64,000 bases of DNA from the sequence record LR756504.1. One strand, written 5' to 3'. A model generated the notes under the pieces. The model had not been told where the DNA came from and did not search any database. It saw nothing but the letters and a program-made list of their open reading frames with translations. Every line of letters begins with the position of its first letter. The first letter of the stretch is position 1. The position numbers and the translations under genes were made by a program. Positions 1,749 through 61,724 of this stretch are shown in pieces.

Positions 1749-1808
1749 ATTAGTATAATTTAGGAGAATAGAAAGTAAATATATACTAAAAAGTAAATAA
1801 AATTTTAA

Positions 1809-2810
1809 ATGAGTAAGTTAAAAAGATTGAAATCTTTTAGTGATTATAAACAGGATATGGGAAATACACCAAAATCTACTCCTGTACCATTGGTTTCGGA
1901 AAGAAATTTACATAAAAGTGTAGTTACTAAACAAAGAATGGTGAAAGAATCTGCTTTTAAAGTGGGTGATGATTATAAAGTAAAGGTTACTTTTGATATT
2001 CCTGTATCATTAATATCTGCTTATATTGAAAAAGTACAATCTGAAACAGGTAAAAATGCTTTAGAACATTTTAATGAAACTGAGTTGGCTGAACAAATGG
2101 CTCAATACATACTAAAACAACATTTAAATATTGATCAAATACCGTCAGCATTATCAGTTGGTGAAGATCCTAATAGTTCTGAATCTACAGAAGCGCAAGA
2201 AGAAAATGATGCTACTGATTTAGGTGCTGAATTTGGTGATACGCCATCGGGTGAAACAGCAGAACCAGGTATTGAAGAAACACCATCAACAGATACACCA
2301 TCTAATATTGATATTAATGATTCTGATTTAAATATTGATAAAGAAGAAGATGGAGAAGATATATCATTAGAAGATGATAATAAAGAAGAGGTTGGTGAAG
2401 ACATTCCATTAGAAGATGAAACTTCTGAAGAACCTGAATCCGAAACAAAAGAAGATCAAGATGAAAAAGAAATTAACTTAAAAAGTGATGAAGTAAATCT
2501 TGGTGAAGAAAGAGAGATTGAAGCAAATAAAATAGAAGAACAAGAAGAAGAATATGAAGAAATAAATCTTGATGTTGATACTATTGGTGATACAACAGGT
2601 GTATTGAATAGTGTTACTATGGCTACTAAAGATATGTTATTCTATCTTAAACATCATGGAATAGATTGTACTGATTGTACAGCCAAAGATGTTGTAGATA
2701 TTTATAATGAAATATCAAAAGAATATACAATTGGAATTGATGATGATGGTAATGAAATAAAGCCAAGTCATAAAGAAGATTCCGATTTTAATGATTCTGA
2801 TTTGTACTAA
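1809..2810 (+). CDS. Highly acidic (D/E-rich) protein, possible head-internal/scaffold protein
   Basis: Long low-complexity D/E tract; N-terminal LKSFSDY tag variant; AATATATA at 1778-1785 upstream. Confidence 0.6.
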   Translation: MSKLKRLKSFSDYKQDMGNTPKSTPVPLVSERNLHKSVVTKQRMVKESAFKVGDDYKVKVTFDIPVSLISAYIEKVQSETGKNALEHFNETELAEQMAQYILKQHLNIDQIPSALSVGEDPNSSESTEAQEENDATDLGAEFGDTPSGETAEPGIEETPSTDTPSNIDINDSDLNIDKEEDGEDISLEDDNKEEVGEDIPLEDETSEEPESETKEDQDEKEINLKSDEVNLGEEREIEANKIEEQEEEYEEINLDVDTIGDTTGVLNSVTMATKDMLFYLKHHGIDCTDCTAKDVVDIYNEISKEYTIGIDDDGNEIKPSHKEDSDFNDSDLY

Positions 2811-2829
2811 AAAATAAAAGATAAATGTT

Positions 2830-3099
2830 ATGAGTAAATATAAATATTTAACAAATTTTAAACAATTTGAATCACCTTATGGGAAAGATTCCAATGGTAC
2901 ACAGACATCACATATGTATAAAGTTGGTGATAATGTTATAGTAGATGACATTAACGAAAAACATGCTGGTAAAGAAGGTGTCATTGTAGTACCTACTGAT
3001 TTACATGAAGTAAAAGAAAAACAAGGTGAAATGGTAAAAGTGAAATTTACCGATGGTAAATCGGATTATGTAAGTATCTATGAATTAAACAAGATATAA
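2830..3099 (+). CDS. Small KOW/SH3-like protein with N-terminal tag variant
   Basis: YKVGDNVIV...HAGKEGVIV KOW-like pattern; starts MSKYKYLTNFKQFES. Confidence 0.45.
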   Translation: MSKYKYLTNFKQFESPYGKDSNGTQTSHMYKVGDNVIVDDINEKHAGKEGVIVVPTDLHEVKEKQGEMVKVKFTDGKSDYVSIYELNKI

Positions 3100-3101
3100 T
3101 G

Positions 3102-3128
3102 AAAAGGGAGATTAATTCTCCCTTTTTT
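3102..3128 (+). terminator. Intrinsic terminator
   Basis: aaaagggag-attaatt-ctcccttttt; near-copy of the 1721 terminator. Confidence 0.85.
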
Positions 3129-3400
3129 ATTTCCGAAATTTTTAAAACTTTTTTACACATTTTCCATATATTATAAAGTCTGTGGTAAATTGTGAATTTA
3201 ATATATACATTTATGGCAATAGGTTCAATACCATCAAGACTTTACTTAGATTATGATATGGCTATCCATATTTATAATAAAATGGGAGATATTCAATTTA
3301 TTGATTTCTTAGAAAACCACTATGTAATCTCTATGGATAAAGATTGTTATTATTTTCTTTTAAGTATTAAACAGGATTATGATAAATTAAAAAAGTTTTA

Positions 3401-10457: not shown

Positions 10458-10744
10458 TAATTATTAATCTATTTTAGGTATATATTATTTTTCTATACCT
10501 TTAAAAACGATTATAAATTTCGCCATTTTTTAATTTCGTTGACTTTTTGCATTTTGTCCCATGCTCTAGTATTAATACTTGTTAAGTGATATGAACCGCA
10601 TTTGGTGCAAAGATAAGAGCGTGATTCTTGCTTTTCCTTGGATTTATACACCTTATTATTTTTAATGTTTAAAAGGACTCTATCAGCTTCATGTTTAGTA
10701 AAGTATTTTCTTTTGAGGCATCCCATAGCTCACAGGGGTTTAGG

Positions 10745-11563: not shown

Positions 11564-11591
11564 AAACTATATATACAAATTTACTAATTTT

Positions 11592-11623
11592 TTTGCATTT
11601 CTGCAAATTTTATGTTATTTTTG
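11592..11623 (+). promoter_or_regulatory. Bacteroidota sigma-A-type promoter
   Basis: TTTG(11592)-N20-TATTTTTG(11616). Confidence 0.75.
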
Positions 11624-15334: not shown

Positions 15335-15366
15335 TTTGGAAGTTTAATTATTTTTGTATATATTTG
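15335..15366 (+). promoter_or_regulatory. Bacteroidota sigma-A-type promoter
   Basis: TTTG(15335)-N20-TATATTTG(15359). Confidence 0.75.
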
Positions 15367-16461: not shown

Positions 16462-16541
16462 GCTCCCATGGTGGAATGGCAGACACGCTCGGCTTAAAAT
16501 CGAGTGCCTTGTGCATACAGGTTCAAGTCCTGTTGGGAGTA
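16462..16541 (+). tRNA. tRNA-Leu(UAA), long variable arm, no encoded CCA
   Basis: GCTCCCA/TGGGAGT acceptor, CTCGG-CTTAAAA-TCGAG anticodon arm, GGTTCAAGTCC T-arm. Confidence 0.92.
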
Positions 16542-16554
16542 CTAATTATCACAT

Positions 16555-16640
16555 GCCCTTGTGATGTAATGCAGCCATGAACGCCTTAGAAGCGTTTGCG
16601 AAGTAATAGTAGCGTGTAGGTTCGAGTCCTACCAAGGGTA
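16555..16640 (+). tRNA. tRNA-Leu(UAG), long variable arm
   Basis: GCCCTTG/CAAGGGT, AACGC-CTTAGAA-GCGTT, GGTTCGAGTCC. Confidence 0.92.
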
Positions 16641-16649
16641 CACAATAAT

Positions 16650-16738
16650 GGAGGGAATCTGGCTGGATGAAGAGCCAATCTTGAAAATTGGTAAATCGGT
16701 GATGAACTGGTTTGTGGGTTCGAGTCCCACTTCCTCCT
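16650..16738 (+). tRNA. tRNA-Ser(UGA)
   Basis: GGAGGGA/TTCCTCC, CCAAT-CTTGAAA-ATTGG, long variable arm, GGGTTCGAGTCCC. Confidence 0.9.
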
Positions 16739-16744
16739 CAAAAT

Positions 16745-16817
16745 GGTACTATGGCCGAGTGGATATAGGCGCACGTCTGCAAAACGTGATACATCAGTTC
16801 GAACCTGATTAGTACCT
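16745..16817 (+). tRNA. tRNA-Cys(GCA)
   Basis: GGTACTA/TAGTACC, CACGT-CTGCAAA-ACGTG, U73. Confidence 0.93.
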
Positions 16818-16824
16818 CAAAAAT

Positions 16825-16911
16825 GGAGAGTAGGCAAATATTGGTTTGTTGCGGCATCCTGCTAAGATGTTCCGTATAAAAGCGGTGAGGGTTCAATTCC
16901 CTTGCTCTCCT
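16825..16911 (+). tRNA. tRNA-Ser(GCU)
   Basis: GGAGAGT/GCTCTCC, GCATC-CTGCTAA-GATGT, long variable arm. Confidence 0.92.
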
Positions 16912-16990
16912 CAAATAAAGTTCTATTGTGTAAATATTATCACACTTAAACGTAGCCGAACTTTTTGATATATAATATCAAAAAAAAGCT

Positions 16991-17695: not shown

Positions 17696-17763
17696 GAGGA
17701 TACATTGGAAATGTATTAGATCGGGATTAACCTGGTGCGTGAGTTTGAATCTCACTTCTTCCA
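17673..17763 (+). tRNA. tRNA-Ser(GGA)
   Basis: GGAAGAA/TTCTTCC, ATACA-TTGGAAA-TGTAT, long variable arm, T-loop TTTGAAT (non-canonical). Confidence 0.85.
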
Positions 17764-17768
17764 CAAAT

Positions 17769-17842
17769 GGCTTAGTGATGTAATTGGTAAACGTGTTCGG
17801 TTCAAACCCGAAATTTTATAGGTTCGAGTCCTATCTAAGCTA
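17769..17842 (+). tRNA. tRNA with CAA anticodon (Leu), short variable loop
   Basis: GGCTTAG/CTAAGCT, TTCGG-TTCAAAC-CCGAA, 5-nt variable loop, A73. Confidence 0.85.
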
Positions 17843-17853
17843 CAATAATAAAT

Positions 17854-17928
17854 GCCATTGTGGTGGAATTGGTTATACACACTAGTCTAAGAAACTAGGA
17901 ATTGCAGGTTCGACTCCTGTCAATGGTA
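17854..17928 (+). tRNA. tRNA with AAG anticodon (Leu, A34), short variable loop
   Basis: GCCATTG/CAATGGT, CTAGT-CTAAGAA-ACTAG, 5-nt variable loop, A73. Confidence 0.88.
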
Positions 17929-17947
17929 CTAAAAAATATATATTTAT

Positions 17948-19068: not shown

Positions 19069-19100
19069 TTTGTATTTGTGTATATATTTTGCTATATTTG
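19069..19100 (+). promoter_or_regulatory. Bacteroidota sigma-A-type promoter
   Basis: TTTG(19069)-N20-TATATTTG(19093); explains the spurious N-terminal extension of ORF 19016. Confidence 0.75.
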
Positions 19101-20344: not shown

Positions 20345-20345
20345 A

Positions 20346-20645: not shown

Positions 20646-20650
20646 TTGAA

Positions 20651-20950: not shown

Positions 20951-20951
20951 A

Positions 20952-22856: not shown

Positions 22857-22918
22857 AGTTTATATATTAATATTACAGCTTTGATTAATATATAGATTTA
22901 GAAAACTTTTAGTATAGG

Positions 22919-23344: not shown

Positions 23345-23376
23345 TTTGTGAATTCAAGGTTTTTTGTGTAAATTTG
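23345..23376 (+). promoter_or_regulatory. Bacteroidota sigma-A-type promoter
   Basis: TTTG(23345)-N20-TAAATTTG(23369). Confidence 0.75.
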
Positions 23377-23765: not shown

Positions 23766-23797
23766 TTTGTATTTGTTTACAAATTTTAGTACCTTTG
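23766..23797 (+). promoter_or_regulatory. Bacteroidota sigma-A-type promoter
   Basis: TTTG(23766)-N20-TACCTTTG(23790); true start of next ORF likely ATG 23818. Confidence 0.75.
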
Positions 23798-27000: not shown

Positions 27001-27027
27001 AAACTTTTAACGTATTTTAAATATAAT
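27001..27027 (+). promoter_or_regulatory. Phage promoter class AAACTW-N15/16-TATAAT
   Basis: AAACTT(27001)-N15-TATAAT(27022), 5 nt before ATG 27032. Confidence 0.65.
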
Positions 27028-29107: not shown

Positions 29108-29177
29108 AATTTATATATTAATATTCAAACTTTATAAAAAATAAAGCATATAAACATATATAAAAAGAATAATATCA

Positions 29178-31889: not shown

Positions 31890-32485
31890 ACGAGTATATA
31901 TTAAACTTTATTTTTAATGTTGGTATAATTACCATGAGCTTTAATTATATTACTAATCATAAAGAATTAAAATATAAAGTTGGGGATACCGTATTTATCG
32001 ATTTGCCTTATATGGATGAAGTTCCAAAGAATTATTCTGATATTGATTACTTAGTAATAGGAATTAAATCATATAAAGAAGGTTTAAGATATTCAATTAA
32101 AGCAGAATGTGAAAATTTCTATTTACATGGTGTAGAAGAACATAAGTTGGTTACTATGGATGAACTATGGAATAATAAAATAAAATGGTTAGGGAAGTAA
32201 AAATGAAAATTCTCAACAAATTTTACCTTTCGAATGAATTAAAAGGTTTGATATAATTGTAAGATTGAATAACTTCATCATCACTAATGTTAGTATTATT
32301 AGTGTTTTTTGGATATAAATTAGTATATGGATTACTATAGAAATTGTTAATTACTTTATTGTTATCTGATTTGGGATAATATTTCTTTCTATTCCTTTTT
32401 TTAGCTTTCTTAGCCTCATTGAGAAAATCATACCACGAAAAAATTTCAATCATAACAGTATTATAATTTGGTTTATATATTAAAA

Positions 32486-33178: not shown

Positions 33179-33331
33179 AATTCTATTATTTCATATTATA
33201 GATAATGCCTTTTAAATGTTTTAAACTTATTGTATATTTTTTGTATAATTACAAATTCTAATTATTGTGAAATATTTAATAAGAAAATTTGAAAATCGTG
33301 AGAAAGTATGTGCTCTTTTCCCAATTTTTTT

Positions 33332-33359
33332 AAACTTTTACTTTCTTATTTTCTATAAT
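33332..33359 (+). promoter_or_regulatory. Phage promoter class AAACTW-N15/16-TATAAT
   Basis: AAACTT(33332)-N16-TATAAT(33354), before ATG 33365. Confidence 0.7.
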
Positions 33360-37720: not shown

Positions 37721-38965
37721 AAAAAGTGAATTAGTCAATTTTTATTATATATTAATTTGAAACTTATTGATTTTGAAACTATATAATAAATATGAAGGAT
37801 TTGGTAAAATTAGATATAGTATTTGAAAACTGTGATTTTATTACAATAGAGAAAGATAATATACACAATTTCTTTATTACAGACATTACAGAGAGAATAT
37901 CATTGGTATCAAATGCTTTACTGGTATATAAAAAAGCAGGTACATGTCATCTAACATTGAAATGGGATAATGTTAAAAACTTTTTTATGCAGTTTGTCGA
38001 TGATTCTAAAACATTAGAAAATAGAATAAAAATTAAGGATATAACTAATTACCATTTACATCTTACTGATGGCTCTGAATTAGTAATATATGTTCCATGG
38101 GAGGGTGGTGATTATACAAATTCTAAGGAAATCCACGAAGAAGTATTACAAAATGATAGAGAATTTTTTACAATAAACCATTAACTTATTGTAAATCAGA
38201 CAGTTATGTAATGTAATAATTACCTTAGAATATTTCTTATTTTAATTTTTTTTAATTATATTTATGCCTAATTAAAAAATATGGTAGCTAAATTTAGAAA
38301 TTATAAAACATTAACACAGGCTGAATTATCTTTATTTTTATTTAACATATATTATAGATGTATGTTTAAAATACAAAACATAAAGATTGTATCAAATGAA
38401 TCACATGTTCGCAGAGAATTTCGTGGTGATAGATATGTAGTTTATTCTAAATTTACAACACAAGAAGAATTTGACAATTTGAAGAAAAAAATTAAAGAAT
38501 TAAGAGCGAAGAAAAAATGACACAGACACTTACGTTTGCTCAATGGTTTGCTAAAGCAAAATTAATATTAGTATCTAAATATGAATGGGATGCTGAAGAT
38601 ATTATGGCATCCATTGATTCGTTGGAAGACTATTATAATGCTGGTTATACCGTTGTGGATGCAATAACAGATGACAGAACATATTGGAATTAAGACTTAG
38701 ATTTCCTTTTATTCATTAAGCCCTTAATGAACTCTTTAACATCATCCTGACAATCTGTGGTGGGTAAAAAGGCATAACCTCTTACACGACTTGACCATTT
38801 AACTAAACCAATAACAGAGCCATCTTTGATTACATTATAAGTATCTGTCTTAGCAGATTCCTTTTTAGGTTGTTTCTCAAACTTAATACCATCCTTAGCA
38901 GATTCCAATAAACTAAATAATGCAAAATGTAATATCATAATCTATATATTAGATTGGTAGATACT

Positions 38966-38993
38966 AAACTTTTTACTTTTTAGATTCTATAAT
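38966..38993 (+). promoter_or_regulatory. Phage promoter class AAACTW-N15/16-TATAAT, back-to-back with a TAATATATA motif on the minus strand (38943-38950)
   Basis: AAACTT(38966)-N16-TATAAT(38988). Confidence 0.7.
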
Positions 38994-39795: not shown

Positions 39796-39823
39796 AAACT
39801 TTTTGCTTTTTAGATCATATAAT
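39796..39823 (+). promoter_or_regulatory. Phage promoter class AAACTW-N15/16-TATAAT
   Basis: AAACTT(39796)-N16-TATAAT(39818). Confidence 0.7.
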
Positions 39824-40720
39824 AGTATATGATTACAAAAACATTCTATAAATAATAAAAAATGGCTATATACAGATTAGGATTTACACAGATTAAATCA
39901 ATACAAGGAAATACATTCATATATAAAATTCTTATTAAGAATGAATTCGAAAAAAATTATGAAATTGAGTATTTATCATTAATACGTATTTATGGTGAAC
40001 AAGATGCGGTTTTAGAAATACACAAAAATCAAACAACATTAATTTCCAAAGATAGAGTATTTGACATCCACAATAAAGAGGTGACATGGTTCAAAAAAAT
40101 ATGGTCAGGATTATAAATTGAACATTATGGATTCTAATTTACATAATATTTTAAATAGAATTGGATTCGAAAAAGTTTATACATATTCAGAAAATTTTGT
40201 AAATACTGTTTATAAATACAAACTCTATTGTCTTAGTGTATATGTTTATAGCAACAGTGAAATTTATTATAACTTTTATATTGATGAACATCTTTATTTT
40301 ATTGATGATAATAATACTATATTATTTGGAGATAATAGAAATAGTCTATTAAAAATATTATTAAGCGAATTTAAAGTAGAATTAAGAAAAAGTAGAATAG
40401 AAGAACTACTTTAATATGTATTCTATTCTATAGTACACATAATTCTTTAATTAAGGTGTCTAATTTTTTAATTCTAATAAATGTTCTAATTTCTTTAAAA
40501 TTAGCATTTTTTGTAATAAAAGTTCTAACGTTAGTAATTTTGTATTCACCATCATAAGTTTTTGTTATAATAAACTCGTGGAAAGAATGGTATGTATATT
40601 CTCTATCACTACCATAAAATTTAGCAGTTTGTTTATCAATACCTAGAGAATCTAATTCGCTCACATTAATTATATTCTCTATTTTTACTAAGTTTGAAAA
40701 TAATTCTAAATATATACAAC

Positions 40721-42974: not shown

Positions 42975-44118
42975 AATATAAAATATGAAACATTTAGTAA
43001 AAATCATATATTATATGATATGGATTTTGAAACTAAAAGTAATTCCAATTCTGATAGACTCGAAAAGGAGAGAAAAATAAAAGAAGAATTTAATACATTA
43101 TTAAAAGAAAATAAGTTAACTTATATTGATGAATTTATTTATGGTTTTGATAATGAACAATATTCTACTACAACTTACTATTTTAAAAATAATGATGTAG
43201 ATACTATATTCAAACACATATTATATCACAAAAAAAATAAAGTGATAATTAATTATACAACACTATATGTAATATGGTATTATAATGAAGATTTAGCCTT
43301 ACGTTTAAAGACTTTAATGTATAAAATCATAAATCGTAGAAAAATTTGTGATGAATTATCTGTATAATTTAGTCTATTGAAATAAATCTAACCTCTGTTC
43401 AAAAAACGATTTCTGTTCTAATTCTAAATATTCCAACTTACTCATTCTATTATACCTTTAATTTTATGTTGTCTAATTATATCCTTAAACTCTTCATTTA
43501 AGAATTCATATACTTTTGAAGAAGTTTTATTCCATAGTAAACATCTATCATCTTTAAATATCTGAAATCTGGTATTTACTTTTATTTCTGAATCCTCTCT
43601 AAACAATGGTGAACTTATTATTAAAATAAGATAATCTTTATATCTATACGATATAGCATCCGTATTTTCGGTTCTATAATAAACGAAACCAATAATATTC
43701 ATAAGCTTCTTAACATTACTCATATAAAAGATTCTAATTTTTTACTTCTAATAAAAACTTTTAGTTCATCAAGTGTTAAATATTCTAATTTACTAATATC
43801 TTTTATTTCATATTTAGTAGTATCTTTAACATAATACTCTTTAAGATGGAATAATTTTTTATGAGCTTCGTGAACTTTAGCTATTACAAATTCACGAAAA
43901 ATATATTCAACAGTATATCTTTCTATAGCTGCATGTTGTTTAGTTTTTACTTTACTTACTACTAATCCTAAAGATTCTAATCTCATGTTTAATTATACAC
44001 TAATATAAAAAAAAGTTTGATTTTAAAACATTTAACCATAGTTTCCCATAAATGTATGGGAAAATTTAAAGAGGTATATCATATACATGAAAATAGAATG
44101 TTGGTGTTTCATCAATAA

Positions 44119-45413: not shown

Positions 45414-45482
45414 TTTAAAACATTTTGAAAGTCTTGGGTATAATACACGAGATAACTTCAAAAAAACTAAAGATAACTTCAA

Positions 45483-46365: not shown

Positions 46366-46393
46366 AAACTTTTTGTAATCGTTTTCATATAAT
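46366..46393 (+). promoter_or_regulatory. Phage promoter class AAACTW-N15/16-TATAAT
   Basis: AAACTT(46366)-N16-TATAAT(46388). Confidence 0.7.
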
Positions 46394-49966: not shown

Positions 49967-49992
49967 AAAATATATAAATTTTATTATATATA

Positions 49993-50196
49993 TTAACTAT
50001 CTTTTACAGAATTTTCACACCACGTTTTAAAATCATCTACAGCATTAGCAGAACCAATTCCTATCTCTTTATAATAAAGTAGATTGCTCATATTATCAGC
50101 CTTCTTAAATTTGTTAGGTATAGGATTCCATGAATATGGTGAGTTTAATGCTAAAACCTCTTCGTGTGAATCGTTAAATTTTTTCAAATGCTTCAT
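49993..50196 (-). CDS. Hypothetical protein with MKHLKKF tag
   Basis: ORF track; ATTATATATA upstream. Confidence 0.55.
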   Translation of the reverse strand: MKHLKKFNDSHEEVLALNSPYSWNPIPNKFKKADNMSNLLYYKEIGIGSANAVDDFKTWCENSVKDS

Positions 50197-50270
50197 AACT
50201 TATATATAATTTTTTAACTATAAAAATTATATTCATAAAATAACACCTAAATTGTATGTAAAGTTTTTTG

Positions 50271-50853: not shown

Positions 50854-50885
50854 TTTGTATATTTCATTTTTTATTGCTATATTTG
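50854..50885 (+). promoter_or_regulatory. Bacteroidota sigma-A-type promoter
   Basis: TTTG(50854)-N20-TATATTTG(50878); next ORF likely starts ATG 50891. Confidence 0.75.
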
Positions 50886-51056
50886 TAGGTATGAAAAAAT
50901 TCAATGATTGGATAGAATATCTAAAGGAAAATGTGGAAAATAACGCATTTTTGATACAACCATTGGAATTATACAATTTAGGCATTTATAATGAATCTGA
51001 CTTAGATGATGTAATTACTAAAGAAGATAGCAATATTTTAACTTCATATACGTTTC

Positions 51057-51740: not shown

Positions 51741-51761
51741 GAACTATATATTAGAATTATT

Positions 51762-52316
51762 CTATACAAAACCATACTTACACTTAACTAATATCGTACC
51801 ATCATAATCCATCACAGCTTTAATAAAACTAAAAGGCATAAAAATCCTACCATTAGCATTTTCTACAATATCATTGAAAATATTATTACATAATCTATCG
51901 TAAAATTTACCATTCTCTTCTAAAGTATTTTTATTTATAGTTTCTCTATATGTATTATTCACCTGAATAGATTCTAAAAAATCTTCATAGTCCAAATCAT
52001 TATCTAAGTTCTCTATCGTAAACTTTCTAACAATTCCTCTATCGTAGTTATGTCTAATTTGAATACCATGCTTAATTAGCTTACTCAATACTAACCATGT
52101 TAAATGTGTACCATCAAAAGTTTTGTATGTTAAAGAAGAATCTTTGTATATAGTCGTTGAATTATCTAAAGAACTTATATACATAGATGCTTGCTCCATA
52201 CATATAGAGAAATTGGTAATATCTTCTATACTTGTAGTATTTGCTAAAGGTGTCCATTTATTAATTATATTACCAATAATATTTTTATCAGCTAATATAT
52301 GTCTCATTGCGCTCAT
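51762..52316 (-). CDS. Hypothetical protein, paralog of 39012..39548
   Basis: LSKLIKHGIQIRHNYD, KCKYGFV. Confidence 0.65.
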   Translation of the reverse strand: MSAMRHILADKNIIGNIINKWTPLANTTSIEDITNFSICMEQASMYISSLDNSTTIYKDSSLTYKTFDGTHLTWLVLSKLIKHGIQIRHNYDRGIVRKFTIENLDNDLDYEDFLESIQVNNTYRETINKNTLEENGKFYDRLCNNIFNDIVENANGRIFMPFSFIKAVMDYDGTILVKCKYGFV

Positions 52317-52738
52317 AATAGTCTTTCAATTTTCTCTGCCCTAATATCAGTAGCTATATCAATAAGTATATTATAAAATTTGGGTACATTTAATGTAGAG
52401 TATATTTCATTGCATTTGTCATAATATAATGAATATAAATTGTATTCATTTTTATCACTCTCAGATATTAATCTATATGTACCACATATATTATATTTTC
52501 TATTATAATCAATAGGAATATTATATCTAACAATTGTTATAACTAATTGATGCCTAACTTCATTATTCCATATATATAATTGTGGGTATAAAATAATATC
52601 AACTTTATCATTAATTTTAATTGTAATCCCATCATTATACATTATTGTATAATCACCATTATCTAATTTATTATCAATAACTGTGCTATAAGTATCAAAA
52701 AAACTTTTTAATATTACAGTTTTATCTTTAATTTCCAT
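52313..52738 (-). CDS. Paralog family C, copy 1
   Basis: FFxxYxxxIxxKLxNGDY...IVRY...RKY...YSTLN...DIRxxKIxxLL. Confidence 0.8.
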   Translation of the reverse strand: MEIKDKTVILKSFFDTYSTVIDNKLDNGDYTIMYNDGITIKINDKVDIILYPQLYIWNNEVRHQLVITIVRYNIPIDYNRKYNICGTYRLISESDKNEYNLYSLYYDKCNEIYSTLNVPKFYNILIDIATDIRAEKIERLL

Positions 52739-53163
52739 TATAATAATTCGTTTATTTTCTCTATCCTAATATCAGTAGTAATATTATTGAATAAAGTAGC
52801 TGCGAGAAATGTATTCTTTTCGGGGATATTAATAGTAGTGTATATATCATTAGATTTATTATAGTATAATGAATATAAATTCCACATGTTATTATTTTCT
52901 GAACATGATAAAACATAACTGCTATAAATTTCATATTTTCTAGCATATCCTGTAACATCAGTATATCTATTAATAGATATTCCTATTGTCCCAGTATCTC
53001 CAATATATGAATATGGAATTAATCTAACATCATACCTATCATTTATTCTAATATAAATTCCAACTAAATTTAATTTATAATCACCATTATTTAACTTAGC
53101 ATTTATGATACTATTATAAGCATTAAAGAAGTTCCTTATAACTTTTTTATCTTTTTCGTTCAT
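52738..53163 (-). CDS. Paralog family C, copy 2
   Basis: As above; RYTDVTGYARKY. Confidence 0.8.
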   Translation of the reverse strand: MNEKDKKVIRNFFNAYNSIINAKLNNGDYKLNLVGIYIRINDRYDVRLIPYSYIGDTGTIGISINRYTDVTGYARKYEIYSSYVLSCSENNNMWNLYSLYYNKSNDIYTTINIPEKNTFLAATLFNNITTDIRIEKINELL

Positions 53164-53573
53164 TATATTAAATTCTCAATTTTACTTTTTCTTAAATCTG
53201 TATTAACATCATCAAAATTAATAGATATTGAAACATGTCCATTAAATGTAGAATATATTTTATTTAATATCCCATAATATAAAGTAAATAATTTAAACTT
53301 ACTATTGATTTCATTGCTATAAAATCCATAAGTATCGTAAATATCATATTTCCTAGCATGACCTGTAATATCTGTATATCTAATAATAGAAACACTTAAT
53401 GTCTTAGTAGAAGATGAATTAAATGGATATAATAAAACATCATATCTATCATTTATTATAATAGTAACATATCTATTTTTTAATTTATAATCACCATTAT
53501 TCAATTTGTCCTGTATAATATTATTATACTCACTAAAAAATGATGCTATAATTTTTTCCTCTTTTTCACTCAT
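53163..53573 (-). CDS. Paralog family C, copy 3
   Basis: As above; RYTDITGHARKY. Confidence 0.8.
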   Translation of the reverse strand: MSEKEEKIIASFFSEYNNIIQDKLNNGDYKLKNRYVTIIINDRYDVLLYPFNSSSTKTLSVSIIRYTDITGHARKYDIYDTYGFYSNEINSKFKLFTLYYGILNKIYSTFNGHVSISINFDDVNTDLRKSKIENLI

Positions 53574-53814
53574 TACATTAAATTCTCAATTTTAGTTACT
53601 CTATACTCAGCAGGTGTTTGAAAGTTATTTAGTATCTGCATATCAGTTTTAAATACACTATAAAAATACATATCATTTAAAGTTAATATCATTTCATCAT
53701 TAGATAATAAACATGTATATCTTTCTCCCTTATTAAATAATTTATAATAAGGATAGTTAATAGTGTTAACACATATTAAGTAATCAATACCTCTATATTT
53801 AGAAAAAACTCCCA

Positions 53815-54252
53815 TTACTCTAATAAGTTATCTATTTTTTGTAATCTAATATCATTCTTAATGTCATCGAATAACATAAACTTAAATTGGTCATTAAAAA
53901 TATTATTAGATGGTATATTAAGTGTGGAATATATCTCGTTAGATTTACTATAATATAATTTATATTCATCATCACCATCATTGATCGAAAATGAATAACT
54001 ATTGTGAATATCATGTAATCTAGCATATCCTGTAATATCAGTATACCTAACAATAGTTGTTTCTAACATAGATGCCATACCCTTATTTGCTTTATATGAG
54101 AATGGAAAGAACATAACATCAAATCGCTCATTAATTTTAATAATGATATGTCTCAATTTTAACTCATAATCACCACTATCTAATTTAGTATCTATTATAA
54201 CATTATAAGTATCGAAGAAGTCTGCTATAGTCTTTCTATCCTTTTTTATCAT
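53815..54252 (-). CDS. Paralog family C, copy 4
   Basis: As above; RYTDITGYARLH. Confidence 0.8.
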   Translation of the reverse strand: MIKKDRKTIADFFDTYNVIIDTKLDSGDYELKLRHIIIKINERFDVMFFPFSYKANKGMASMLETTIVRYTDITGYARLHDIHNSYSFSINDGDDEYKLYYSKSNEIYSTLNIPSNNIFNDQFKFMLFDDIKNDIRLQKIDNLLE

Positions 54253-54266
54253 ATTCCCAATTCCTA

Positions 54267-54695
54267 TTATAATAGTCTATCTATTTTCTCTACCCTAATA
54301 TCACTATAAATTTCTTTGAATAAACTAAACCCATCACTTTTAGGTATATTAAGTGTAGAATATATCTCATTAGATTTATTATAGTATAAGGAATATAAAT
54401 TATATTCATCATCATTTTCTCTACAATTAAATCCATAACTTCTAATAATATTATGTTTCCTAGCATACCCAGTAATATCAGCATATCTAATAATAGTTAT
54501 TTCTATCAATGGTGTATCACCATTACCATACCAAATTGTTGTATGTGGATACATCTTAATATCAAATCTATCACTTACTCTAATAGTAATATCCATCTGC
54601 TTTAATTCATAATCACCATTATCCAATTTAGCATTTATTATACTATTATAAGTATTGAAGAAGCTTGCTACAATCTTTTTATCTCCCGTTAACAT
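54267..54695 (-). CDS. Paralog family C, copy 5
   Basis: As above; own promoter AAACTT-N16-TATAAT at 54715-54742. Confidence 0.8.
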   Translation of the reverse strand: MLTGDKKIVASFFNTYNSIINAKLDNGDYELKQMDITIRVSDRFDIKMYPHTTIWYGNGDTPLIEITIIRYADITGYARKHNIIRSYGFNCRENDDEYNLYSLYYNKSNEIYSTLNIPKSDGFSLFKEIYSDIRVEKIDRLL

Positions 54696-54791
54696 ATTAA
54701 TAATTCATATTATCATTATAGCGGAATTATATGGGAAAGTTTTATTTAAACTATTAAGAATATTTATGTATAATAAGTAAACTATAAATAC

Positions 54792-55702: not shown

Positions 55703-55745
55703 ATACTATTATAGGGAAATTATAAGGGAAAGTTTTATATAAAAC

Positions 55746-56146: not shown

Positions 56147-56178
56147 TTTGTATTTCTCATTATTTTTTAATATATTTG
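56147..56178 (+). promoter_or_regulatory. Bacteroidota sigma-A-type promoter
   Basis: TTTG(56147)-N20-TATATTTG(56171). Confidence 0.75.
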
Positions 56179-57815: not shown

Positions 57816-57937
57816 ACTAATTTAATATTTACATATATATATTAATATAAAAAGAACACTTATATACACATATAGAAATAAAATATATGCTTCAAAAAGA
57901 TAATTTGGTATATGTTGTCAAAAAAAATTAAGATTTA

Positions 57938-57969
57938 TTTGGATAGTTTAAATATTCTTTGTATCTTTG
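57938..57969 (+). promoter_or_regulatory. Bacteroidota sigma-A-type promoter
   Basis: TTTG(57938)-N20-TATCTTTG(57962); true start likely ATG 57985. Confidence 0.75.
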
Positions 57970-57984
57970 TACAAATTATTCTAT

Positions 57985-58895
57985 ATGAGGCTAACAGATT
58001 CAGTAAAAGAAAGCTTTTTTAAATATCCATCCTTATTCTATAATAAGGATTATGATAGAATTAAGCATTCTGTGTGCCATCATATGTTTATTGTATTGGG
58101 TAATGAATATGATTGGGCTGAAACTAAAGATACAAAAAAAGCAGGTTATCTAATTGAACCAAAATCAAGAAAAGTTAACGGTGATTGGGTAAGAATCATA
58201 GATAAACCCTATGGTAAGAAAACTATAGATTTGGATATTGATATGTACCTGAAAGCTGATAAAATGTATCAACTTCAAATTGTTGACCATCAACGTACAA
58301 ATGAACATATTCAAAACAATATCAATATGTTTAAAGAGATGGGTAAAGAAATTGACTCTAATCTTATAGAAATACTATCAAAAAGAATCCTATCAAAAAG
58401 TTATCGTGAAGGTAGTCGCCCCTAAATACCTTATTACCTGGAGAAAAACTTACAGATAAACATGAATACTTTTTGGAAGAAATTGGTAGTAGAGTATTAG
58501 AAGGAGGTGATTCTCCATATCCTAATTTTTCTAAACAGTATAGTAAATTTTGGCAAAAAGGCTCAGAATACATTCAAGATGATTGGAGAGAAGAAGGGAT
58601 AAATCATTTAAACTATTGGAGAGAATACTTCAATGATGAAGAAAGAATCAAAACTTATTCTCACTACCCATTTAGTAACGATGGTAAAAGTTTTAATAAT
58701 GTATTGGATGCTATTAGAAAACAAGTTAAAGCAGGTAATAATAAAGAATCAGTATTGAAGAATTATTGGCTACCAGATTTTGACATAAATGATGATAACG
58801 CATATAAAGATGCTGTTAAACAAAGATGGGATAATAACCTCAATAAAACAAAATCATTCATTGAAGAAACTACTAATAGATTAATTACATTATAA
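57985..58895 (+). CDS. Probable single gene split by a frameshift near 58414-58425
   Basis: First frame ends YREGSRP*; second frame is open from 58416 (SPLNTLLPGEKLTDKHEY...), well before its annotated TTG. Confidence 0.5.
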
Positions 58896-61050
58896 ATATA
58901 AATTTATGAAATTAAGATACATCGTAATCGGATTCTTCGCTATTGTTATTCTACACTATACAGTAGTATTAACCTTTGGTTCATATGTAAAGTCTTCTAA
59001 AGGTATAAAAGACACAGGACATACTTATATCATTACTGTAGATGATAGAAACAATTCTGCTACTCATATATCAGATTCTATATTATCACAGACAGAAAGA
59101 TGTGTAGAATTTAGAAATGAGTTTGGTATGATACAAACCGAATGCGGAGATAGAATATCTAAAATTCAGATTAAATAGGCTATGAATAAAGATTTTAAAT
59201 TACTTGCACCTAACGGTAGAATATGTTATTTGAGAGATATGATACCATCCGATACAAAATACATTAAAGGAATGGTGGCTATTTTTGATTTAGAAACAGA
59301 TGAAATGATAATGAGACATTTCGATAATGTGTATTACAATGCTATTAAAAAAGGATATAAAGATTTAAGAAATTAAAGGTGTAGTTAATAACCTTAAAAG
59401 ATAGTAGGAACAACTTCTATGGATACCAATTGTAAATAGTCATGCTAATTTTATTAAGCGAAATTGAACGATCTAAATATATCTATGATTTAGATGATAA
59501 TTGGGACGATGAAGGTTCTATTGGATATACTTTTGAAACTTGGGAGAAAGCTATTAATTTTATAACCAAATTATATAACCATATAAAATCTAAGCATTCT
59601 ATAATAATGGATACTCCAACAGTCTCACATGGCCCTATGGGTTCAATTGATATTCTATGGGAAAATTCTAATTATAGACTACTTATAAATGTTCCAAAAG
59701 ATTCAAATACCATTAAATACTATGGTGATAATTATAAGAATAAATCGTATAAAGGAACACATAGCTTAAAAAAATTAAATTTTATATCTAATATATTGTT
59801 TAATTTGATAACTACATAACCATGAAAAAAATCCTAATTAGAGTATACTGCGGAATTATTATAGAAGATAAGTGCGGTAAACAATTACATCCATTAAATG
59901 ATGTTAAAGAAGCACAGAAAATCATTATGGCTAAGAAGTCAGTAGATTGCTATAGTAATAGCCCAGACTTCGTAAGTACTATAAAATACTTAGGTGAAAA
60001 GGAAAATGTTCAAACTGAGTTCTTCCTAAATGGATTATCCTTTGGTAATAACATTGATCCAATTTTTGGAGACTTTAATAAAGCTATGGATTATATGGCT
60101 GATATGAATCTATTGTAATATGAAAAATAAGAATACTTTAACAATTGAGGAAATTATAGATGGTATTAAATCTAAGTTTTCTGACTACTACTCTAATGTA
60201 TATATAGATGATAAAGATACCATAGTCTACTTTTTATTCTTTTTAAAAGAGAATACTATTGAGATTAGATCTGAGTTTTATGACTACGAAGAATACGTTA
60301 ATGAGAGAACATCCAAAGAAATTTCTTTTAAGTTCATGAGTTCAAAACTTAAAGAAAGTGATTTATTAACTGCTATAAAAATAGATTAACTATGACACCA
60401 AACACAGAAAAAGAACTAAAAGAATTAGCCGAAGAAAATGGCTATGACTCTATAAGAATATTCATTGCACCCGATAAAGAAGTATCTACAGAATCAGTAA
60501 TGGAAGATATGAAGGAAGCAATCAAAGAAGCTAGGACTGCTACACCTAAATATACTTTAGAATAACTTTAACGTAGAGATTCTAAGTTAAACAGGTTCTT
60601 TTTTACCTGATAGAATCTCTATTAATTTACTAATAACTTCTTCTAAGTCTTCTATATTAGAAATTTCTACATCGTAAATCTCAGCATATTCTGTAGTTTT
60701 TTCATCAGTTTTTCTATTAGTAATAAACTCACCGATAGTATTAAATATTGATAAATCTTCGGGTGCATCACCTACAGTAAATACTTTCTCAAATATCGTA
60801 ATGAAATGATTATCTTCCGATATATTTATATAACCTTTACCATATCCTATAGAACCAACATAGTTTATTTTATCTGATATTAGTTTAGATATATTAGGCA
60901 TTCTATGATTCTGATTATCAATAAAGCTAATATACATAACACGATTCTTATATTCAAAGTAATCCATCGTACATAATTGAGCATTCAATTTTAATGGAAA
61001 CGGGGATAGCATTTTTTCTATTTCTTCTTTCATAAGAGATTACATTTTTT

Positions 61051-61108
61051 ATTATACGATAATTGTACAGAAAGTTTATTTAAACTTATTAGAAAGTTAT
61101 TCTATAAT
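61051..61108. promoter_or_regulatory. Divergent pair of AAACTT-N15-TATAAT promoters
   Basis: Minus: 61072-61077 / 61051-61056; plus: 61082-61087 / 61103-61108. Confidence 0.65.
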
Positions 61109-61115
61109 TAGAAGT

Positions 61116-61691
61116 ATGATTTACGTAATAGGATATAGAGATAAAGTTCCTGAAGGAAGCTTAGTAATTAATACAACTTCAAGGTGTACTAATTGGAGTA
61201 GAGGGTTATCTCCTTTCTTCTTAAATCCAGGTAAACTATATGGTAATCACTCTGCTAAGAACGTAGAAAATGCGTGGCAGTATTCTAAAGTCTATAAAGA
61301 ACATTTAGATGATAAAGGTAATATCACTGATGAATACTTCTATTGGGCTAAAGAAGGTTGGAACTTAGATTCAGCAGTAAGGTATCCTATGGGGAAAGAT
61401 AGAAAACCTGAATTCTCTTATTGGGATGGAAATAGGTATGACTATATTACAGCAAGAAAGAAAATCTATGCTCCTCTATATTCAAATGCTGTTAAACTAT
61501 ACCCTGCTTATAATACCCTAAAAGATATATGTAGGAAAGCTAAAGAACAAAATGAAGATGTTTATCTATTAGACTTCGATGGCTATAATCATATCAAAGA
61601 AGGTACAGACTTTAAAGATGTAGTTAATAACCCTGATAGAAAGATGGGACACGCTTTCGTATTGTGGTATATGTTGAGTAAGGAGATTTAA
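61116..61691 (+). CDS. Phage protein, possibly a distant NADAR-like fold
   Basis: LSPF, VENAWQYSKVY, ARKKIYAPLY, GHA motifs. Confidence 0.45.
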   Translation: MIYVIGYRDKVPEGSLVINTTSRCTNWSRGLSPFFLNPGKLYGNHSAKNVENAWQYSKVYKEHLDDKGNITDEYFYWAKEGWNLDSAVRYPMGKDRKPEFSYWDGNRYDYITARKKIYAPLYSNAVKLYPAYNTLKDICRKAKEQNEDVYLLDFDGYNHIKEGTDFKDVVNNPDRKMGHAFVLWYMLSKEI

Positions 61692-61724
61692 AACTATTTA
61701 AAAAAAATCTCTATAATACTTAGA

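What the first reader, a model, noticed from the sequence alone, without database searches (positions are those of the whole stretch)
1778..61717. Three promoter classes that partition gene types
Seen: (1) eight TTTG-N20-TAnnTTTG sites with invariant spacing (11592, 15335, 19069, 23345, 23766, 50854, 56147, 57938). (2) At least 18 AAAC(T/A)W-N15/16-TATAAT-like sites (e.g. 27001, 31903, 33332, 37760, 38966, 39796, 45418, 46366, 54748, 61082, 61691; minus strand 33195, 40669, 43992, 54715, 55708, 61051), mostly heading C-tag gene arrays. (3) WATATATA before N-tag and structural genes. Classes 2 and 3 often sit back-to-back within ~30 bp (31895/31903, 37746/37760, 38943/38966, 40690/40709). Established: class 1 is the Bacteroidota primary-sigma consensus. 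Inference: early host-RNAP, middle (phage sigma or activator reading AAACTT) and late (gp55-like sigma) programmes. The class 2 consensus is not one I recognise from described phages. The motifs also correct several ORF starts (19106, 23818, 40664, 40721, 50891, 57985).
Basis: partly seen in the sequence, partly recalled or inferred. Interest (0 to 1): 0.68.

Follow-up and report, generated by a model that had tools for sequence, protein, structure and literature searches.

The report
Three promoter classes in a megaphage
This stretch of a 636-kb uncultivated phage of Bacteroidota carries three distinct, statistically solid promoter types that fit a host-sigma, then phage ECF-sigma, then phage gp55-like-sigma cascade; it is a useful regulatory map of a known kind, and the timing is not yet shown by experiment.

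Summary
The three motif classes are real. The window belongs to LR756504.1, a 636,363-bp circular "Mahaphage" predicted to infect Bacteroidetes.

- **Class 1** (TTTG-N20-TAnnTTTG): 10 hits in the window against 0.73 expected, and 74 genome-wide at N20 only. It is the Bacteroidota primary-sigma consensus.
- **Class 2** (AAACWW-N15/16-TATAAT): 24 hits in the window against 2.2 expected. The spacing peak is sharp, and the sites are almost all intergenic and point at genes. Its -35 box is the AAC-plus-T-tract typical of ECF (group IV) sigmas. The genome encodes three ECF-type sigmas.
- **Class 3** (T-W-A-TATATA, no -35 box): it is not over-represented in the window as a whole, but it is concentrated in intergenic DNA at fixed distances from ATG. 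It resembles T4 late promoters. The genome, outside the window, encodes a 134-aa gp55-like sigma.

The wiring fits a cascade. An ECF sigma gene carries a conserved class 1 promoter. The gp55-like gene carries a conserved class 2 promoter. Class 3 precedes sheath-like, prohead-protease and giant genes and the "N-tag" genes.

In all three classes the ATG lies either 5-6 nt or about 17-28 nt after the -10-type element, so about a third of promoter-proximal genes look leaderless.

Timing and transcription start sites remain untested. I rate it a new member of a known kind.

The parts
11576..11607 (-). Class 1 promoter, TTTG-N20-TAAATTTG, 25 nt before the 268-aa HD-domain gene that starts at 11551
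11592..11623 (+). Class 1 promoter, divergent partner of 11576-11607, sharing the palindromic -33 box TTTGCATTTCTGCAAA; ATG at 11647
15335..15366 (+). Class 1 promoter; ATG at 15383, 17 nt after the motif
19069..19100 (+). Class 1 promoter; ATG at 19106, 6 nt after the motif (leaderless type); supports the corrected start
23345..23376 (+). Class 1 promoter; ATG at 23393
23766..23797 (+). Class 1 promoter with a palindromic -33 region; ATG at 23818
50854..50885 (+). Class 1 promoter; ATG at 50891, 6 nt after the motif (leaderless type)
56147..56178 (+). Class 1 promoter; ATG at 56206
57938..57969 (+). Class 1 promoter; in-frame ATG at 57985, 16 nt after the motif
629..655 (+). Class 2 promoter, AAACTT-N15-TATAAT; ATG at 674
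3145..3172 (+). Class 2-like promoter, AAACTT-N16-TATATT; ATG at 3213
27001..27027 (+). Class 2 promoter; ATG at 27032, 5 nt after the -10 box (leaderless type); TATATA of the divergent gene 26987 lies 2 nt upstream
31903..31929 (+). Class 2 promoter; ATG at 31934 (5 nt)
33195..33221 (-). Class 2 promoter, AAACAT-N15-TATAAT; ATG at 33178
33332..33359 (+). Class 2 promoter heading the co-directional run of small genes at 33365-36846; ATG at 33365 (6 nt)
37760..37787 (+). Class 2 promoter; ATG at 37792 (5 nt)
38966..38993 (+). Class 2 promoter; ATG at 39012
39796..39823 (+). Class 2 promoter; ATG at 39862
40669..40695 (-). Class 2 promoter; the only in-frame start downstream is GTG at 40664 (5 nt)
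43992..44018 (-). Class 2 promoter; ATG at 43986 (6 nt)
45418..45444 (+). Class 2 promoter, AAACAT-N15-TATAAT; ATG at 45483
46366..46393 (+). Class 2 promoter; ATG at 46397 (4 nt)
54715..54742 (-). Class 2 promoter heading the minus-strand array of 136-145-aa C-tag paralogues at 52313-54695
54748..54774 (+). Class 2 promoter, divergent from 54715-54742; ATG at 54792
55708..55735 (-). Class 2 promoter; ATG at 55702 (6 nt); the gene is a C-tag paralogue
61051..61077 (-). Class 2 promoter; ATG at 61033
61082..61108 (+). Class 2 promoter, divergent from 61051-61077; ATG at 61116 (8 nt)
61691..61717 (+). Class 2 promoter, AAACTA-N15-TATAAT; ATG at 61725 (8 nt)
1778..1785 (+). Class 3 element AATATATA, 24 nt before the 333-aa gene at 1809
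10479..10486 (-). Class 3 element, 22 nt before the 567-aa gene that starts at 10457 and has a weak CBM_5_12 match below Pfam's cut-off
22861..22868 (-). Class 3 element, 5 nt before the 529-aa N-tag gene (MKFLKKF...) that starts at 22856
29112..29119 (-). Class 3 element, 5 nt before the 426-aa N-tag gene that starts at 29107
31895..31902 (-). Class 3 element, 6 nt before the 225-aa N-tag gene that starts at 31889; it abuts the -35 box of the class 2 promoter at 31903
37746..37753 (-). Class 3 element, 26 nt before the 296-aa N-tag gene that starts at 37720; back-to-back with class 2 at 37760
38943..38950 (-). Class 3 element, 5 nt before the gene that starts at 38938; back-to-back with class 2 at 38966
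40709..40716 (+). Class 3 element, 5 nt before the 619-aa gene at 40721; back-to-back with class 2 at 40669-40695
49985..49994 (-). Class 3 element, 19-21 nt before the N-tag gene (MKHIKKFEN...) that starts at 49966
50201..50208 (-). Class 3 element, 5 nt before the N-tag gene that starts at 50196
51745..51752 (-). Class 3 element, 5 nt before the 227-aa N-tag gene that starts at 51740
57834..57843 (-). Class 3 element, 19-21 nt before the N-tag gene that starts at 57815

Best explanation
The window is part of a 636-kb megaphage of a Bacteroidota host. The phage has no recognisable RNA polymerase of its own and appears to redirect the host core enzyme through a sigma cascade.

- **Class 1** (TTTG-N20-TAHHTTTG) is read by the host primary sigma. 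It drives early genes, among them a phage ECF-type sigma.
- **Class 2** (w-AAAC-T/A-T/A, then N15/16, then TATAAT) is read by host core plus one or more of the three phage ECF-type sigmas. It drives middle genes: arrays of small C-tag proteins, metabolic and replication genes, and the gene for a gp55-like sigma that has region 2 only.
- **Class 3** (T-W-A-TATATA, a -10-only element with no -35 box) is read by host core plus the gp55-like sigma, in the manner of T4 late promoters. It drives late genes: sheath-like, prohead protease, giant virion-type proteins and the N-tag proteins.

In all three classes transcription is inferred to start about 5-6 nt after the -10-type element. About one third of promoter-proximal genes would then be translated from leaderless mRNAs.

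**Shown:** the motifs, their spacing, placement and orientation; the coupling of -35 and -10 boxes; the sigma genes; conservation in relatives; and the statistical association with gene types.

**Inferred:** which sigma reads which class, the start sites, and the temporal order.
For: **The classes are real**
- Spacing peaks are sharp.
- PWM hits are 40-340 times denser in intergenic than in coding DNA.
- At a fixed 5-6 nt before the ATG, the most enriched hexamers are xxTTTG, TATATA and TATAAT, and no fourth type appears.

**Classes 2 and 3 are distinct**
- Of well-placed TATAAT boxes, 55 of 125 have AAACWW at N15/16. For TATATA the figure is 10 of 262 (odds ratio 20, p = 7e-22).
- No position upstream of TATATA beyond -6 carries information.

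**Start-site geometry**
- The distance from the -10-type element to the ATG is bimodal in all three classes: 5-6 nt and 17-28 nt. The short type makes up 33%, 32% and 36% of classes 1, 2 and 3.
- Short-distance genes start with ATG in 114 of 118 cases.
- In leadered class 3 sites, the base 5 nt after TATATA is A in 88%.
- In Flavobacterium johnsoniae the G of TANNTTTG is at -5 (PMC6847099).

**Sigma genes**
- Three genes pass the NCBIfam ECF model cut-off. The best PDB relatives of sigma 1 are SigH, SigW and SigE.
- The class 2 -35 box has the AAC motif plus T-tract of group IV promoters (PMC1540707).
- The P0008 family profile matches T4 gp55 (7d7c_F, E = 0.0018, collinear from residue 5). 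It has at least 198 close homologues, many on contigs of 0.5-0.77 Mb.
- Its tblastn hits in Xoo-sp13, XacN1 and DSL-LC02 are annotated as late sigma factors.
- Iyer et al. place Lak-type phages in a group that lacks an RNAP but has minimal sigma factors and gp33 (PMC7824862).

**Wiring**
- gTTG-N20-TAnnTTTG is conserved upstream of ECF sigma 1 in four phages whose sigma proteins are 51-79% identical.
- AAACTT-N15/16-TAnAAn lies upstream of the gp55-like gene here and in LR745206, LR756502, LR756501 and Lak-A1.
- TATATA is conserved upstream of three orthologous genes.

**Gene content**
- Class 1: CCA-adding or poly(A) polymerase-like, T4-type RNA ligase, TelA, HD domain.
- Class 2: DUF7487 three times, aldehyde dehydrogenase, N-terminal part of PolB, S1 domain.
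- Class 3: prohead protease S77/S80-like, a 1248-aa protein with a weak sheath match, giants of 4864, 2911 and 2458 aa, a Laminin_G_3 protein.
- N-tag and C-tag associations.
Against: - There is no transcript evidence of any kind.
- ECF promoters usually have G upstream of AAC and a CGT- or TCxxA-type -10 box. Class 2 has A or T there and a canonical TATAAT.
- There are three ECF sigmas and only one obvious ECF-type class. None of the three can be assigned to it.
- Promoters of ECF sigmas 2 and 3 are unclear.
- The strict class 2 pattern is only 2-4 times enriched in four relatives and not enriched in LR745206.
- The match of P0008 to gp55 is remote: 21 bits.
- No gp45-type clamp was found by Pfam, and gp33 was not searched for.
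- The partition leaks.
  - ClpB-like and PolB C-terminal genes have class 3.
  - The terminase operon has class 2 and class 3.
  - 588 of 926 genes have no promoter call of their own.
- About half of intergenic TATATA hexamers are expected by chance, so single class 3 calls are uncertain.
Confidence: 0.62

Rival explanations
1. Class 2 is read by host RNA polymerase carrying a host ECF sigma, or by the host primary sigma remodelled by a phage activator in the manner of T4 MotA/AsiA. The AAACTT box would then be an activator box, and the phage ECF sigmas would not be involved.
For: - No direct link between any phage ECF sigma and class 2 was obtained.
- The -10 box is a canonical TATAAT, which is not typical of ECF promoters.
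- Bacteroidota genomes carry many ECF sigmas. The nearest cellular homologue of sigma 1 (38% identity) sits on bacterial-looking contigs.
- Al-Shayeb et al. mention AsiA-like proteins in some huge phages (PMC7162821).
Against: - The host primary sigma of Bacteroidetes does not use TATAAT (PMC6847099).
- The box has the AAC-plus-T-tract form and the 15-16 nt spacer of group IV promoters (PMC1540707). It does not have the T4 MotA-box sequence or position (my knowledge of T4, not checked here).
- The phage carries three ECF sigmas. One of them has a conserved early-type promoter.
Confidence: 0.15
2. Class 3 is a promoter, but the gp55-like protein does not read it. It is read by one of the ECF sigmas, or by an unrecognised phage RNA polymerase such as one hidden in the 4864-, 2911- or 1575-aa ORFan proteins, in the way crAss-like phages carry giant divergent polymerases.
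For: - There are more phage sigmas (four) than phage promoter classes (two).
- The giant proteins have no Pfam or PHROG match.
- Divergent phage polymerases escape Pfam models.
Against: - ECF sigmas depend on a -35 box, and class 3 has none.
- A -10-only A/T element is what gp55-type sigmas read in T4: TATAAATA (PMC1524935).
- The gp55-like gene is one of the best conserved genes of the clade.
- The giant genes are themselves behind class 3 promoters. That fits virion proteins better than the enzyme that reads class 3.
Confidence: 0.12
3. The TATATA elements are not promoters. They would be a by-product of A/T-rich intergenic composition, or act as DNA-bending or UP-like elements, translation enhancers or RNA-processing sites.
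For: - The motif has low information content.
- WATATATA is under-represented in the window overall: 56 against 88 expected.
- About half of intergenic TATATA hexamers are expected by chance.
- TATATA is its own reverse complement, so strand cannot be read from the core.
Against: - It is 2-fold above dinucleotide shuffles of the intergenic DNA, z = 9.3.
- Distances to the ATG are sharp and identical to those of classes 1 and 2.
- The flanks are asymmetric: T at -3 and A at -1 upstream, and no T directly downstream.
- The base 5 nt downstream is A in 88% of leadered sites.
- The hexamer is conserved while its distance to the ATG drifts in orthologues.
- It is strongly associated with N-tag genes.
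Confidence: 0.07
4. The three classes are promoters for three sigmas but do not define early, middle and late times. They could instead set expression level, or respond to host state.
For: - No temporal data exist.
- Classes are interspersed along the genome rather than in large blocks.
- Some replication genes carry class 3, and a packaging operon carries class 2 plus class 3.
Against: - The wiring is directional. A sigma gene lies behind class 1, and the gp55-like gene lies behind class 2. Both arrangements are conserved.
- Virion-type genes lie behind class 3.
- Interspersed early, middle and late promoters are normal in T4-like genomes (general knowledge).
Confidence: 0.1

Closest known systems
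Bacteroidetes primary-sigma (sigma-ABfr) promoters, -33 TTTG / -7 TANNTTTG
   Same: - Class 1 has both boxes.
- The two N positions never hold G in the intergenic window sites.
- The G of the -7 box sits 5 nt before the inferred start, as in Flavobacterium johnsoniae (PMC6847099).
   Different: - The -33 box is far better conserved here, and its spacing is fixed at N20. In F. johnsoniae it is barely visible.
- 40% of sites carry a palindrome, TTTGTA-N6-TACAAA, over the -33 box.
- A third of the sites are of the leaderless type. In F. johnsoniae 87% of predicted transcripts have a leader longer than 10 nt.
Group IV (ECF) sigma promoters, e.g. E. coli sigma-E, GGAACTT followed by a spacer and a short -10 element
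   Same: - AAC core followed by a T-tract.
- A 15-16 nt spacer.
- Strict dependence of the -10 box on the -35 box (PMC1540707).
- ECF-type sigma genes are present in the same genome.
   Different: - A or T stands in place of the upstream G region.
- The -10 box is a canonical TATAAT, not the usual ECF type.
- The sigmas are phage-encoded, and no anti-sigma was identified.
Phage T4 late transcription: gp55, gp33 and the gp45 clamp on TATAAATA promoters
   Same: - An A/T-rich -10-only element with no -35 box.
- A small sigma with region 2 only that is homologous to gp55.
- It is placed before virion genes.
- Iyer et al. group Lak-type phages with T4-like transcription factors (PMC7824862).
   Different: - The consensus is T-W-A-TATATA, not TATAAATA.
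- The protein has 134 aa, against 185 in gp55.
- gp33 was not examined, and no gp45-type clamp was found.
- The host RNA polymerase is of the Bacteroidota type.
Sigma cascades of large lytic phages, such as SPO1 (host sigma-A, then gp28, then gp33/34), and the T4 early/middle/late programme
   Same: - Sequential replacement of the specificity factor on host core RNA polymerase.
- Each stage encodes the factor for the next.
- SPO1 as described in PMC13401047.
   Different: - The middle stage seems to use ECF-type sigmas. SPO1 uses gp28 and T4 uses MotA/AsiA appropriation.
- The genome is about four times larger.
- Nothing has been tested biochemically.

Membership tests
Bacteroidetes primary-sigma promoter | -7 element TANNTTTG with no G at the N positions | tested here: met
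   All nine intergenic window sites have AA, TT, TA, CC or TC at the N positions. The rule is from PMC6847099.
Bacteroidetes primary-sigma promoter | -33 element TTTG at a fixed distance upstream | tested here: met
   54 sites at N20 against 2-9 at other spacings in the 348-kb record. 74 at N20 in the full genome.
Bacteroidetes primary-sigma promoter | Transcription starts 4-5 nt after the G of the -7 element and is carried out by the host holoenzyme | not testable with these tools
   Only indirect evidence: the ATG lies exactly 5 nt after the G in 18 of 72 class 1 genes. No reads were available.
ECF (group IV) sigma promoter | AAC motif in the -35 box followed by a T-rich stretch | tested here: met
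   The consensus is w-AAAC-T/A-T/A-t. The motif definition is from PMC1540707.
ECF (group IV) sigma promoter | G-rich region just upstream of AAC | tested here: not met
   The positions before AAC are A or T in nearly all sites.
ECF (group IV) sigma promoter | Narrow spacer, with the -10 box dependent on the -35 box | tested here: met
   Spacing is 15 or 16 only. TATAAT is coupled to AAACWW, odds ratio 20.
ECF (group IV) sigma promoter | A cognate ECF sigma is present and reads the promoter | tested here: inconclusive
   Three ECF-type sigma genes are present: 63-76 bits against a cut-off of 42.9. No sigma-to-promoter assignment was possible.
T4-type late promoter system (gp55) | -10-only A/T element with no -35 box | tested here: met
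   No information upstream of -6. Only 10 of 262 TATATA sites have an AAACWW box.
T4-type late promoter system (gp55) | A gp55 homologue is encoded | tested here: met
   The P0008 family profile has T4 gp55 (7d7c_F) as its best PDB hit, E = 0.0018, collinear over residues 5-91. Homologues are annotated as late sigma in three cultured jumbo phages. The match is remote, and a fold check could not be run.
T4-type late promoter system (gp55) | gp33 co-activator and a sliding-clamp activator | tested here: inconclusive
   PF09116 (gp45 C-terminal domain) gives no match in the 636-kb record. gp33 was not searched for. Iyer et al. report gp33 orthologues in this phage group.
T4-type late promoter system (gp55) | Drives virion and packaging genes late in infection | tested here: inconclusive
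   Class 3 precedes a prohead protease-like gene, a protein with a weak sheath match and the giant proteins. It also precedes ClpB-like and PolB genes. Timing was not testable.
T4 middle promoter (MotA/AsiA sigma appropriation) | MotA box centred near -30, combined with a primary-sigma -10 box | tested here: not met
   The class 2 upstream box is AAACTT at 15-16 nt from the -10 box. That is a different sequence and position from the T4 MotA box as I recall it. The host primary sigma does not use TATAAT. MotA and AsiA homologues were not searched for.

The most novel reading that the evidence does not exclude
The megaphage runs a four-sigma programme: three ECF-type sigmas plus a gp55-like sigma. 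Under this reading:
- Leaderless mRNAs are a deliberate, genome-wide strategy. About a third of promoter-proximal genes in every class have the leaderless geometry, against a small minority of transcripts in a Bacteroidetes host.
- Divergent class 2 and class 3 promoters are packed so tightly that the -35 box of one abuts the -10 element of the other. They would then act as mutually exclusive middle/late switches.
- A palindromic operator over the -33 box of 40% of class 1 promoters would serve a phage repressor that shuts early transcription off.

This would be a regulatory architecture not described for any phage.
Probability: 0.25. Interest if true: 0.65.

Novelty: new member of a known kind. 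Interest (0 to 1): 0.5.

Why it matters
Huge phages of the Lak/Mahaphage clade are uncultivated, and most of their genes have no known function. A promoter map gives about 330 genes a predicted expression class from sequence alone.

The map has several practical uses:
- It names four candidate specificity factors that can be tested in Bacteroides reporter systems.
- It corrects gene starts.
- It ties the two large tagged protein families to separate stages: C-tag to the middle stage and N-tag to the late stage. This narrows what those tags could do.
- It offers compact, orthogonal sigma-promoter pairs for Bacteroidota synthetic biology, if the pairings hold.

It does not change how phage temporal control is understood.

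Tried and rejected
- **PHROGs scan** of ten large class 3 proteins gave only three hits: a peptidase, a ClpB-like ATPase and one family of unknown function. Pfam on the largest proteins gave one Laminin_G_3 domain. Functional labels therefore stay thin.
- **RNA polymerase genes.** Pfam models for beta' and beta (PF00623, PF00562) found nothing in the 348-kb record. This does not exclude a very divergent polymerase. They were not run on the other 288 kb of the genome.
- **Relatives in IMG/VR.** A search with the two ECF sigmas found only a near-identical contig, or nothing.
- **Sequencing runs.** I did not seek reads by any other route.
- **A fourth promoter class** was looked for among 189 unlabelled upstream regions and among hexamers at the leaderless position. 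None was seen.
- **TAG or TGA recoding,** known in Lak phages, was checked and rejected for this genome.
- **My first guess for the N-tag** was an N-terminal copy of the C-tag motif. It was wrong: only 2 genes matched. The real N-tag is MK-[YHF]-[IL]-K-x-F.
- **The strict class 2 pattern in five relatives** is only modestly enriched, and in one it is not enriched. I do not claim the exact consensus is clade-wide.
- **Three calls failed on coordinates or frame** and were corrected or dropped.

Full report
**What the sequence is**

The window is positions 193,965-257,964 of a 347,857-bp IMG/VR virus record with 26% G+C. That record is identical, as a circular permutation, to part of LR756504.1. 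LR756504.1 is an uncultured phage genome of 636,363 bp.
- Its length matches the 636-kb genome among the four largest curated genomes of Al-Shayeb et al. [quoted passage not shown]
- The standard code fits. Reading TAG or TGA as sense barely changes ORF coverage.
- A simple codon-usage gene caller gave 594 genes in the 348-kb record and 926 in the rebuilt 636-kb genome, with 90-92% coding.

**Class 1**

TTTG-N20-TAnnTTTG occurs 10 times in the window against 0.73 expected.
- There is also a divergent partner at 11576-11607 and one probable chance match inside an ORF at 27585.
- In the 348-kb record there are 54 sites at N20 against 2-9 at any other spacing. 47 of the 54 are intergenic and 45 lie within 150 nt of a same-strand start. 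In the full genome there are 74 sites at N20.
- The motif equals the published Bacteroidetes -33/-7 consensus, down to the absence of G at the two free positions (PMC6847099).

**Class 2**

AAACWW-N15/16-TATAAT occurs 24 times in the window against 2.2 expected.
- The spacing profile is sharp. For AAACTT...TATAAT the counts are 16 at N15, 16 at N16 and 0-4 elsewhere. 29 of those 32 sites are intergenic.
- With a position matrix, hits are 40-100 times denser in intergenic DNA than in coding DNA.

**Class 3**

WATATATA is rarer in the window than in shuffles, 56 against 88, because it is avoided in coding sequence. The signal lies in placement.
- TATATA is 5.9-fold, and TATATATA 25-fold, denser between genes.
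- It is 2-fold above dinucleotide shuffles of the intergenic DNA itself, z = 9.3.
- It starts at sharply preferred positions, 10 nt and 24-26 nt before the ATG.
- Its flanks are asymmetric: T at -3, A at -1 and no T just downstream. There is no -35 signal at all.

**Three classes, not a continuum**
- Of well-placed TATAAT boxes, 55 of 125 have AAACWW at N15/16. Of well-placed TATATA, only 10 of 262 do (p = 7e-22).
- Among hexamers ending 5-6 nt before an ATG, the enriched ones are xxTTTG, TATATA and TATAAT. I saw no fourth type.

**Start-site geometry**

The distance from the last base of the -10-type element to the ATG has the same two modes in each class: 5-6 nt and about 17-28 nt.
- The short mode holds 33%, 32% and 36% of class 1, 2 and 3 genes. 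Those genes start with ATG in 114 of 118 cases.
- In leadered class 3 sites the base 5 nt after TATATA is A in 88%.
- In Flavobacterium johnsoniae the G of the -7 box is at -5. The class 1 short mode therefore puts the start at the A of the ATG.
It is inference. No reads could be examined.

**Who reads them**

No RNA polymerase beta or beta' gene was detected in the 348-kb record. The full genome has three ECF-type sigma genes, all above the NCBIfam cut-off. In record coordinates they lie at 529236-529778, 456068-456634 and 339722-340315.
- The best PDB relatives of sigma 1 are SigH, SigW and SigE.
- Group IV promoters have an AAC motif followed by a T-tract, as in GGAACTT (PMC1540707). Class 2 has exactly that core and a 15-16 nt spacer. 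It lacks the upstream G region, and its -10 box is TATAAT.

A fourth gene, at record 192391-192795 and outside both the window and the 348-kb record, encodes a 134-aa protein with only sigma region 2.
- It has at least 198 close homologues, many on contigs of 0.5-0.77 Mb.
- A profile of 21 of them has T4 gp55 as its best PDB hit, E = 0.0018, aligned from the N-terminus.
- tblastn finds relatives annotated as late-transcription sigma factors in Xoo-sp13, XacN1 and DSL-LC02.
- T4 late promoters are a -10-only TATAAATA read by gp55 (PMC1524935).
- Iyer et al. had already grouped Lak-type phages with phages that lack an RNA polymerase but have minimal sigma factors and gp33 (PMC7824862).

**Wiring and conservation**
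- ECF sigma 1 has gTTG-N20-TAnnTTTG upstream in this phage and in three relatives whose sigma proteins are 79%, 56% and 51% identical.
- The gp55-like gene has AAACTT-N15-TACAAT here. LR745206, LR756502, LR756501 and Lak-A1 have AAACTT-N15/16-TAnAAn upstream of their orthologues.
- TATATA is kept upstream of three orthologous genes while its distance to the ATG changes.
- A class 2 site before a 372-aa gene is also conserved.
- The strict class 2 pattern is only 2-4 times enriched in four related genomes, and not enriched in one.

**Gene types**
- Class 1 genes with a Pfam match: a CCA-adding or poly(A) polymerase-like enzyme, a T4-type RNA ligase, TelA and an HD-domain protein.
- Class 2 genes: three DUF7487 proteins, an aldehyde dehydrogenase, saccharopine dehydrogenase, a PolB N-terminal part, an S1-domain protein and the gp55-like gene.
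- Class 3 genes: a prohead-protease-like protein (matches at or just below the Pfam cut-offs), a 1248-aa protein with a weak sheath match, the 4864-, 2911- and 2458-aa giants, and a Laminin_G_3 protein. A ClpB-like ATPase and a PolB part also carry class 3.
- The terminase operon has a class 2 promoter and then a class 3 promoter.
It is present in 129 of 594 genes, against 1.6% of internal windows. It marks 41% of genes in class 2 units, against 11% in class 1 units and 16% in class 3 units.
- The N-tag is an N-terminal MK-[YHF]-[IL]-K-x-F motif in 28 genes. 21 of them lie directly behind class 3, odds ratio 14.
- The partition is real but statistical.

**Verdict**

The sigma-to-class assignments and the temporal order remain inference. 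The scheme is a sigma cascade of the kind known from T4 and SPO1, with a Bacteroidota early promoter, an ECF-like middle promoter and a gp55-type late promoter. I rate it a new member of a known kind, with moderate interest.

- No stretch of N occurs in the genome.
- No alternative genetic code was applied.
- The full-genome rebuild concerns a bacteriophage only.

Noticed in passing
whole genome; in the window e.g. 20045-21257, 33365-36846, 52313-54695: About a fifth of all genes end in a shared C-terminal motif, R-x3-I-x2-[LFIM], e.g. ...RKxRIxNL. It occurs in 129 of 594 genes in the 348-kb record and 154 of 926 in the full genome, against 1.6% of internal windows. The genes are mostly small paralogue arrays. 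It looks like a sorting, degradation or assembly tag.
   Followed up: partly
window gene starts 5391(-), 22856(-), 29107(-), 31889(-), 37720(-), 49966(-), 50196(-), 51740(-), 57815(-); 28 genes genome-wide: N-terminal motif MK-[YHF]-[IL]-K-x-F, often followed by a very acidic tract. From memory it resembles the short capsid-targeting sequence of T4 internal proteins. A prohead protease-like gene is present. These may be proteins packaged in the head.
   Followed up: partly
class 1 sites, e.g. window 11592-11607, 23766-23783; many in record 1-90 kb: 29 of 73 class 1 promoters carry an inverted repeat over the -33 box, TTTGTA-N6-TACAAA, with a 6-nt loop in 20 of the 29. A composition control gives 7%. 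It is a possible operator for a dimeric regulator of early promoters.
   Followed up: partly
window 16462-16912 and 17673-17929: Two clusters with eight tRNA genes: Leu x4, Ser x3 and Cys. Some ORFs called by my gene caller in tRNA regions of the genome are probably false.
   Followed up: no
whole 348-kb record: The IMG/VR record is listed as 100% complete with inverted terminal repeats. In fact it is an exact 348-kb arc of the 636-kb circular genome LR756504.1. The terminal inverted repeat is only 123 bp.
   Followed up: yes
record 163-176 kb (outside the window): The terminase large subunit (768 aa, Terminase_6N) lies in an operon that begins with a class 2 promoter and has a class 3-type TATATAAT just upstream. 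Packaging genes may therefore be served by two stages.
   Followed up: partly
window 27827-29107(-) and nine paralogues elsewhere: A 10-member family of 355-723-aa proteins; one member scanned against PHROGs matches a peptidase family (phrog_4191). The family is scattered over the genome.
   Followed up: no
intergenic regions genome-wide: G/C-rich hairpins followed by T-runs, such as ...CCCTTTTT, are strongly enriched between genes: AAAAAGGG is 19-fold enriched. They often sit just upstream of the next promoter, as before the 871-aa gene. They are probably intrinsic terminators that bound the transcription units.
   Followed up: no
record 456639-457034, just after ECF sigma 2: ECF sigma 2 sits between a 114-aa gene and a 131-aa gene in one operon. 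The 131-aa neighbour could be an anti-sigma factor. Its promoter has a -7 box (TATATTTG) but no good -33 box.
   Followed up: no
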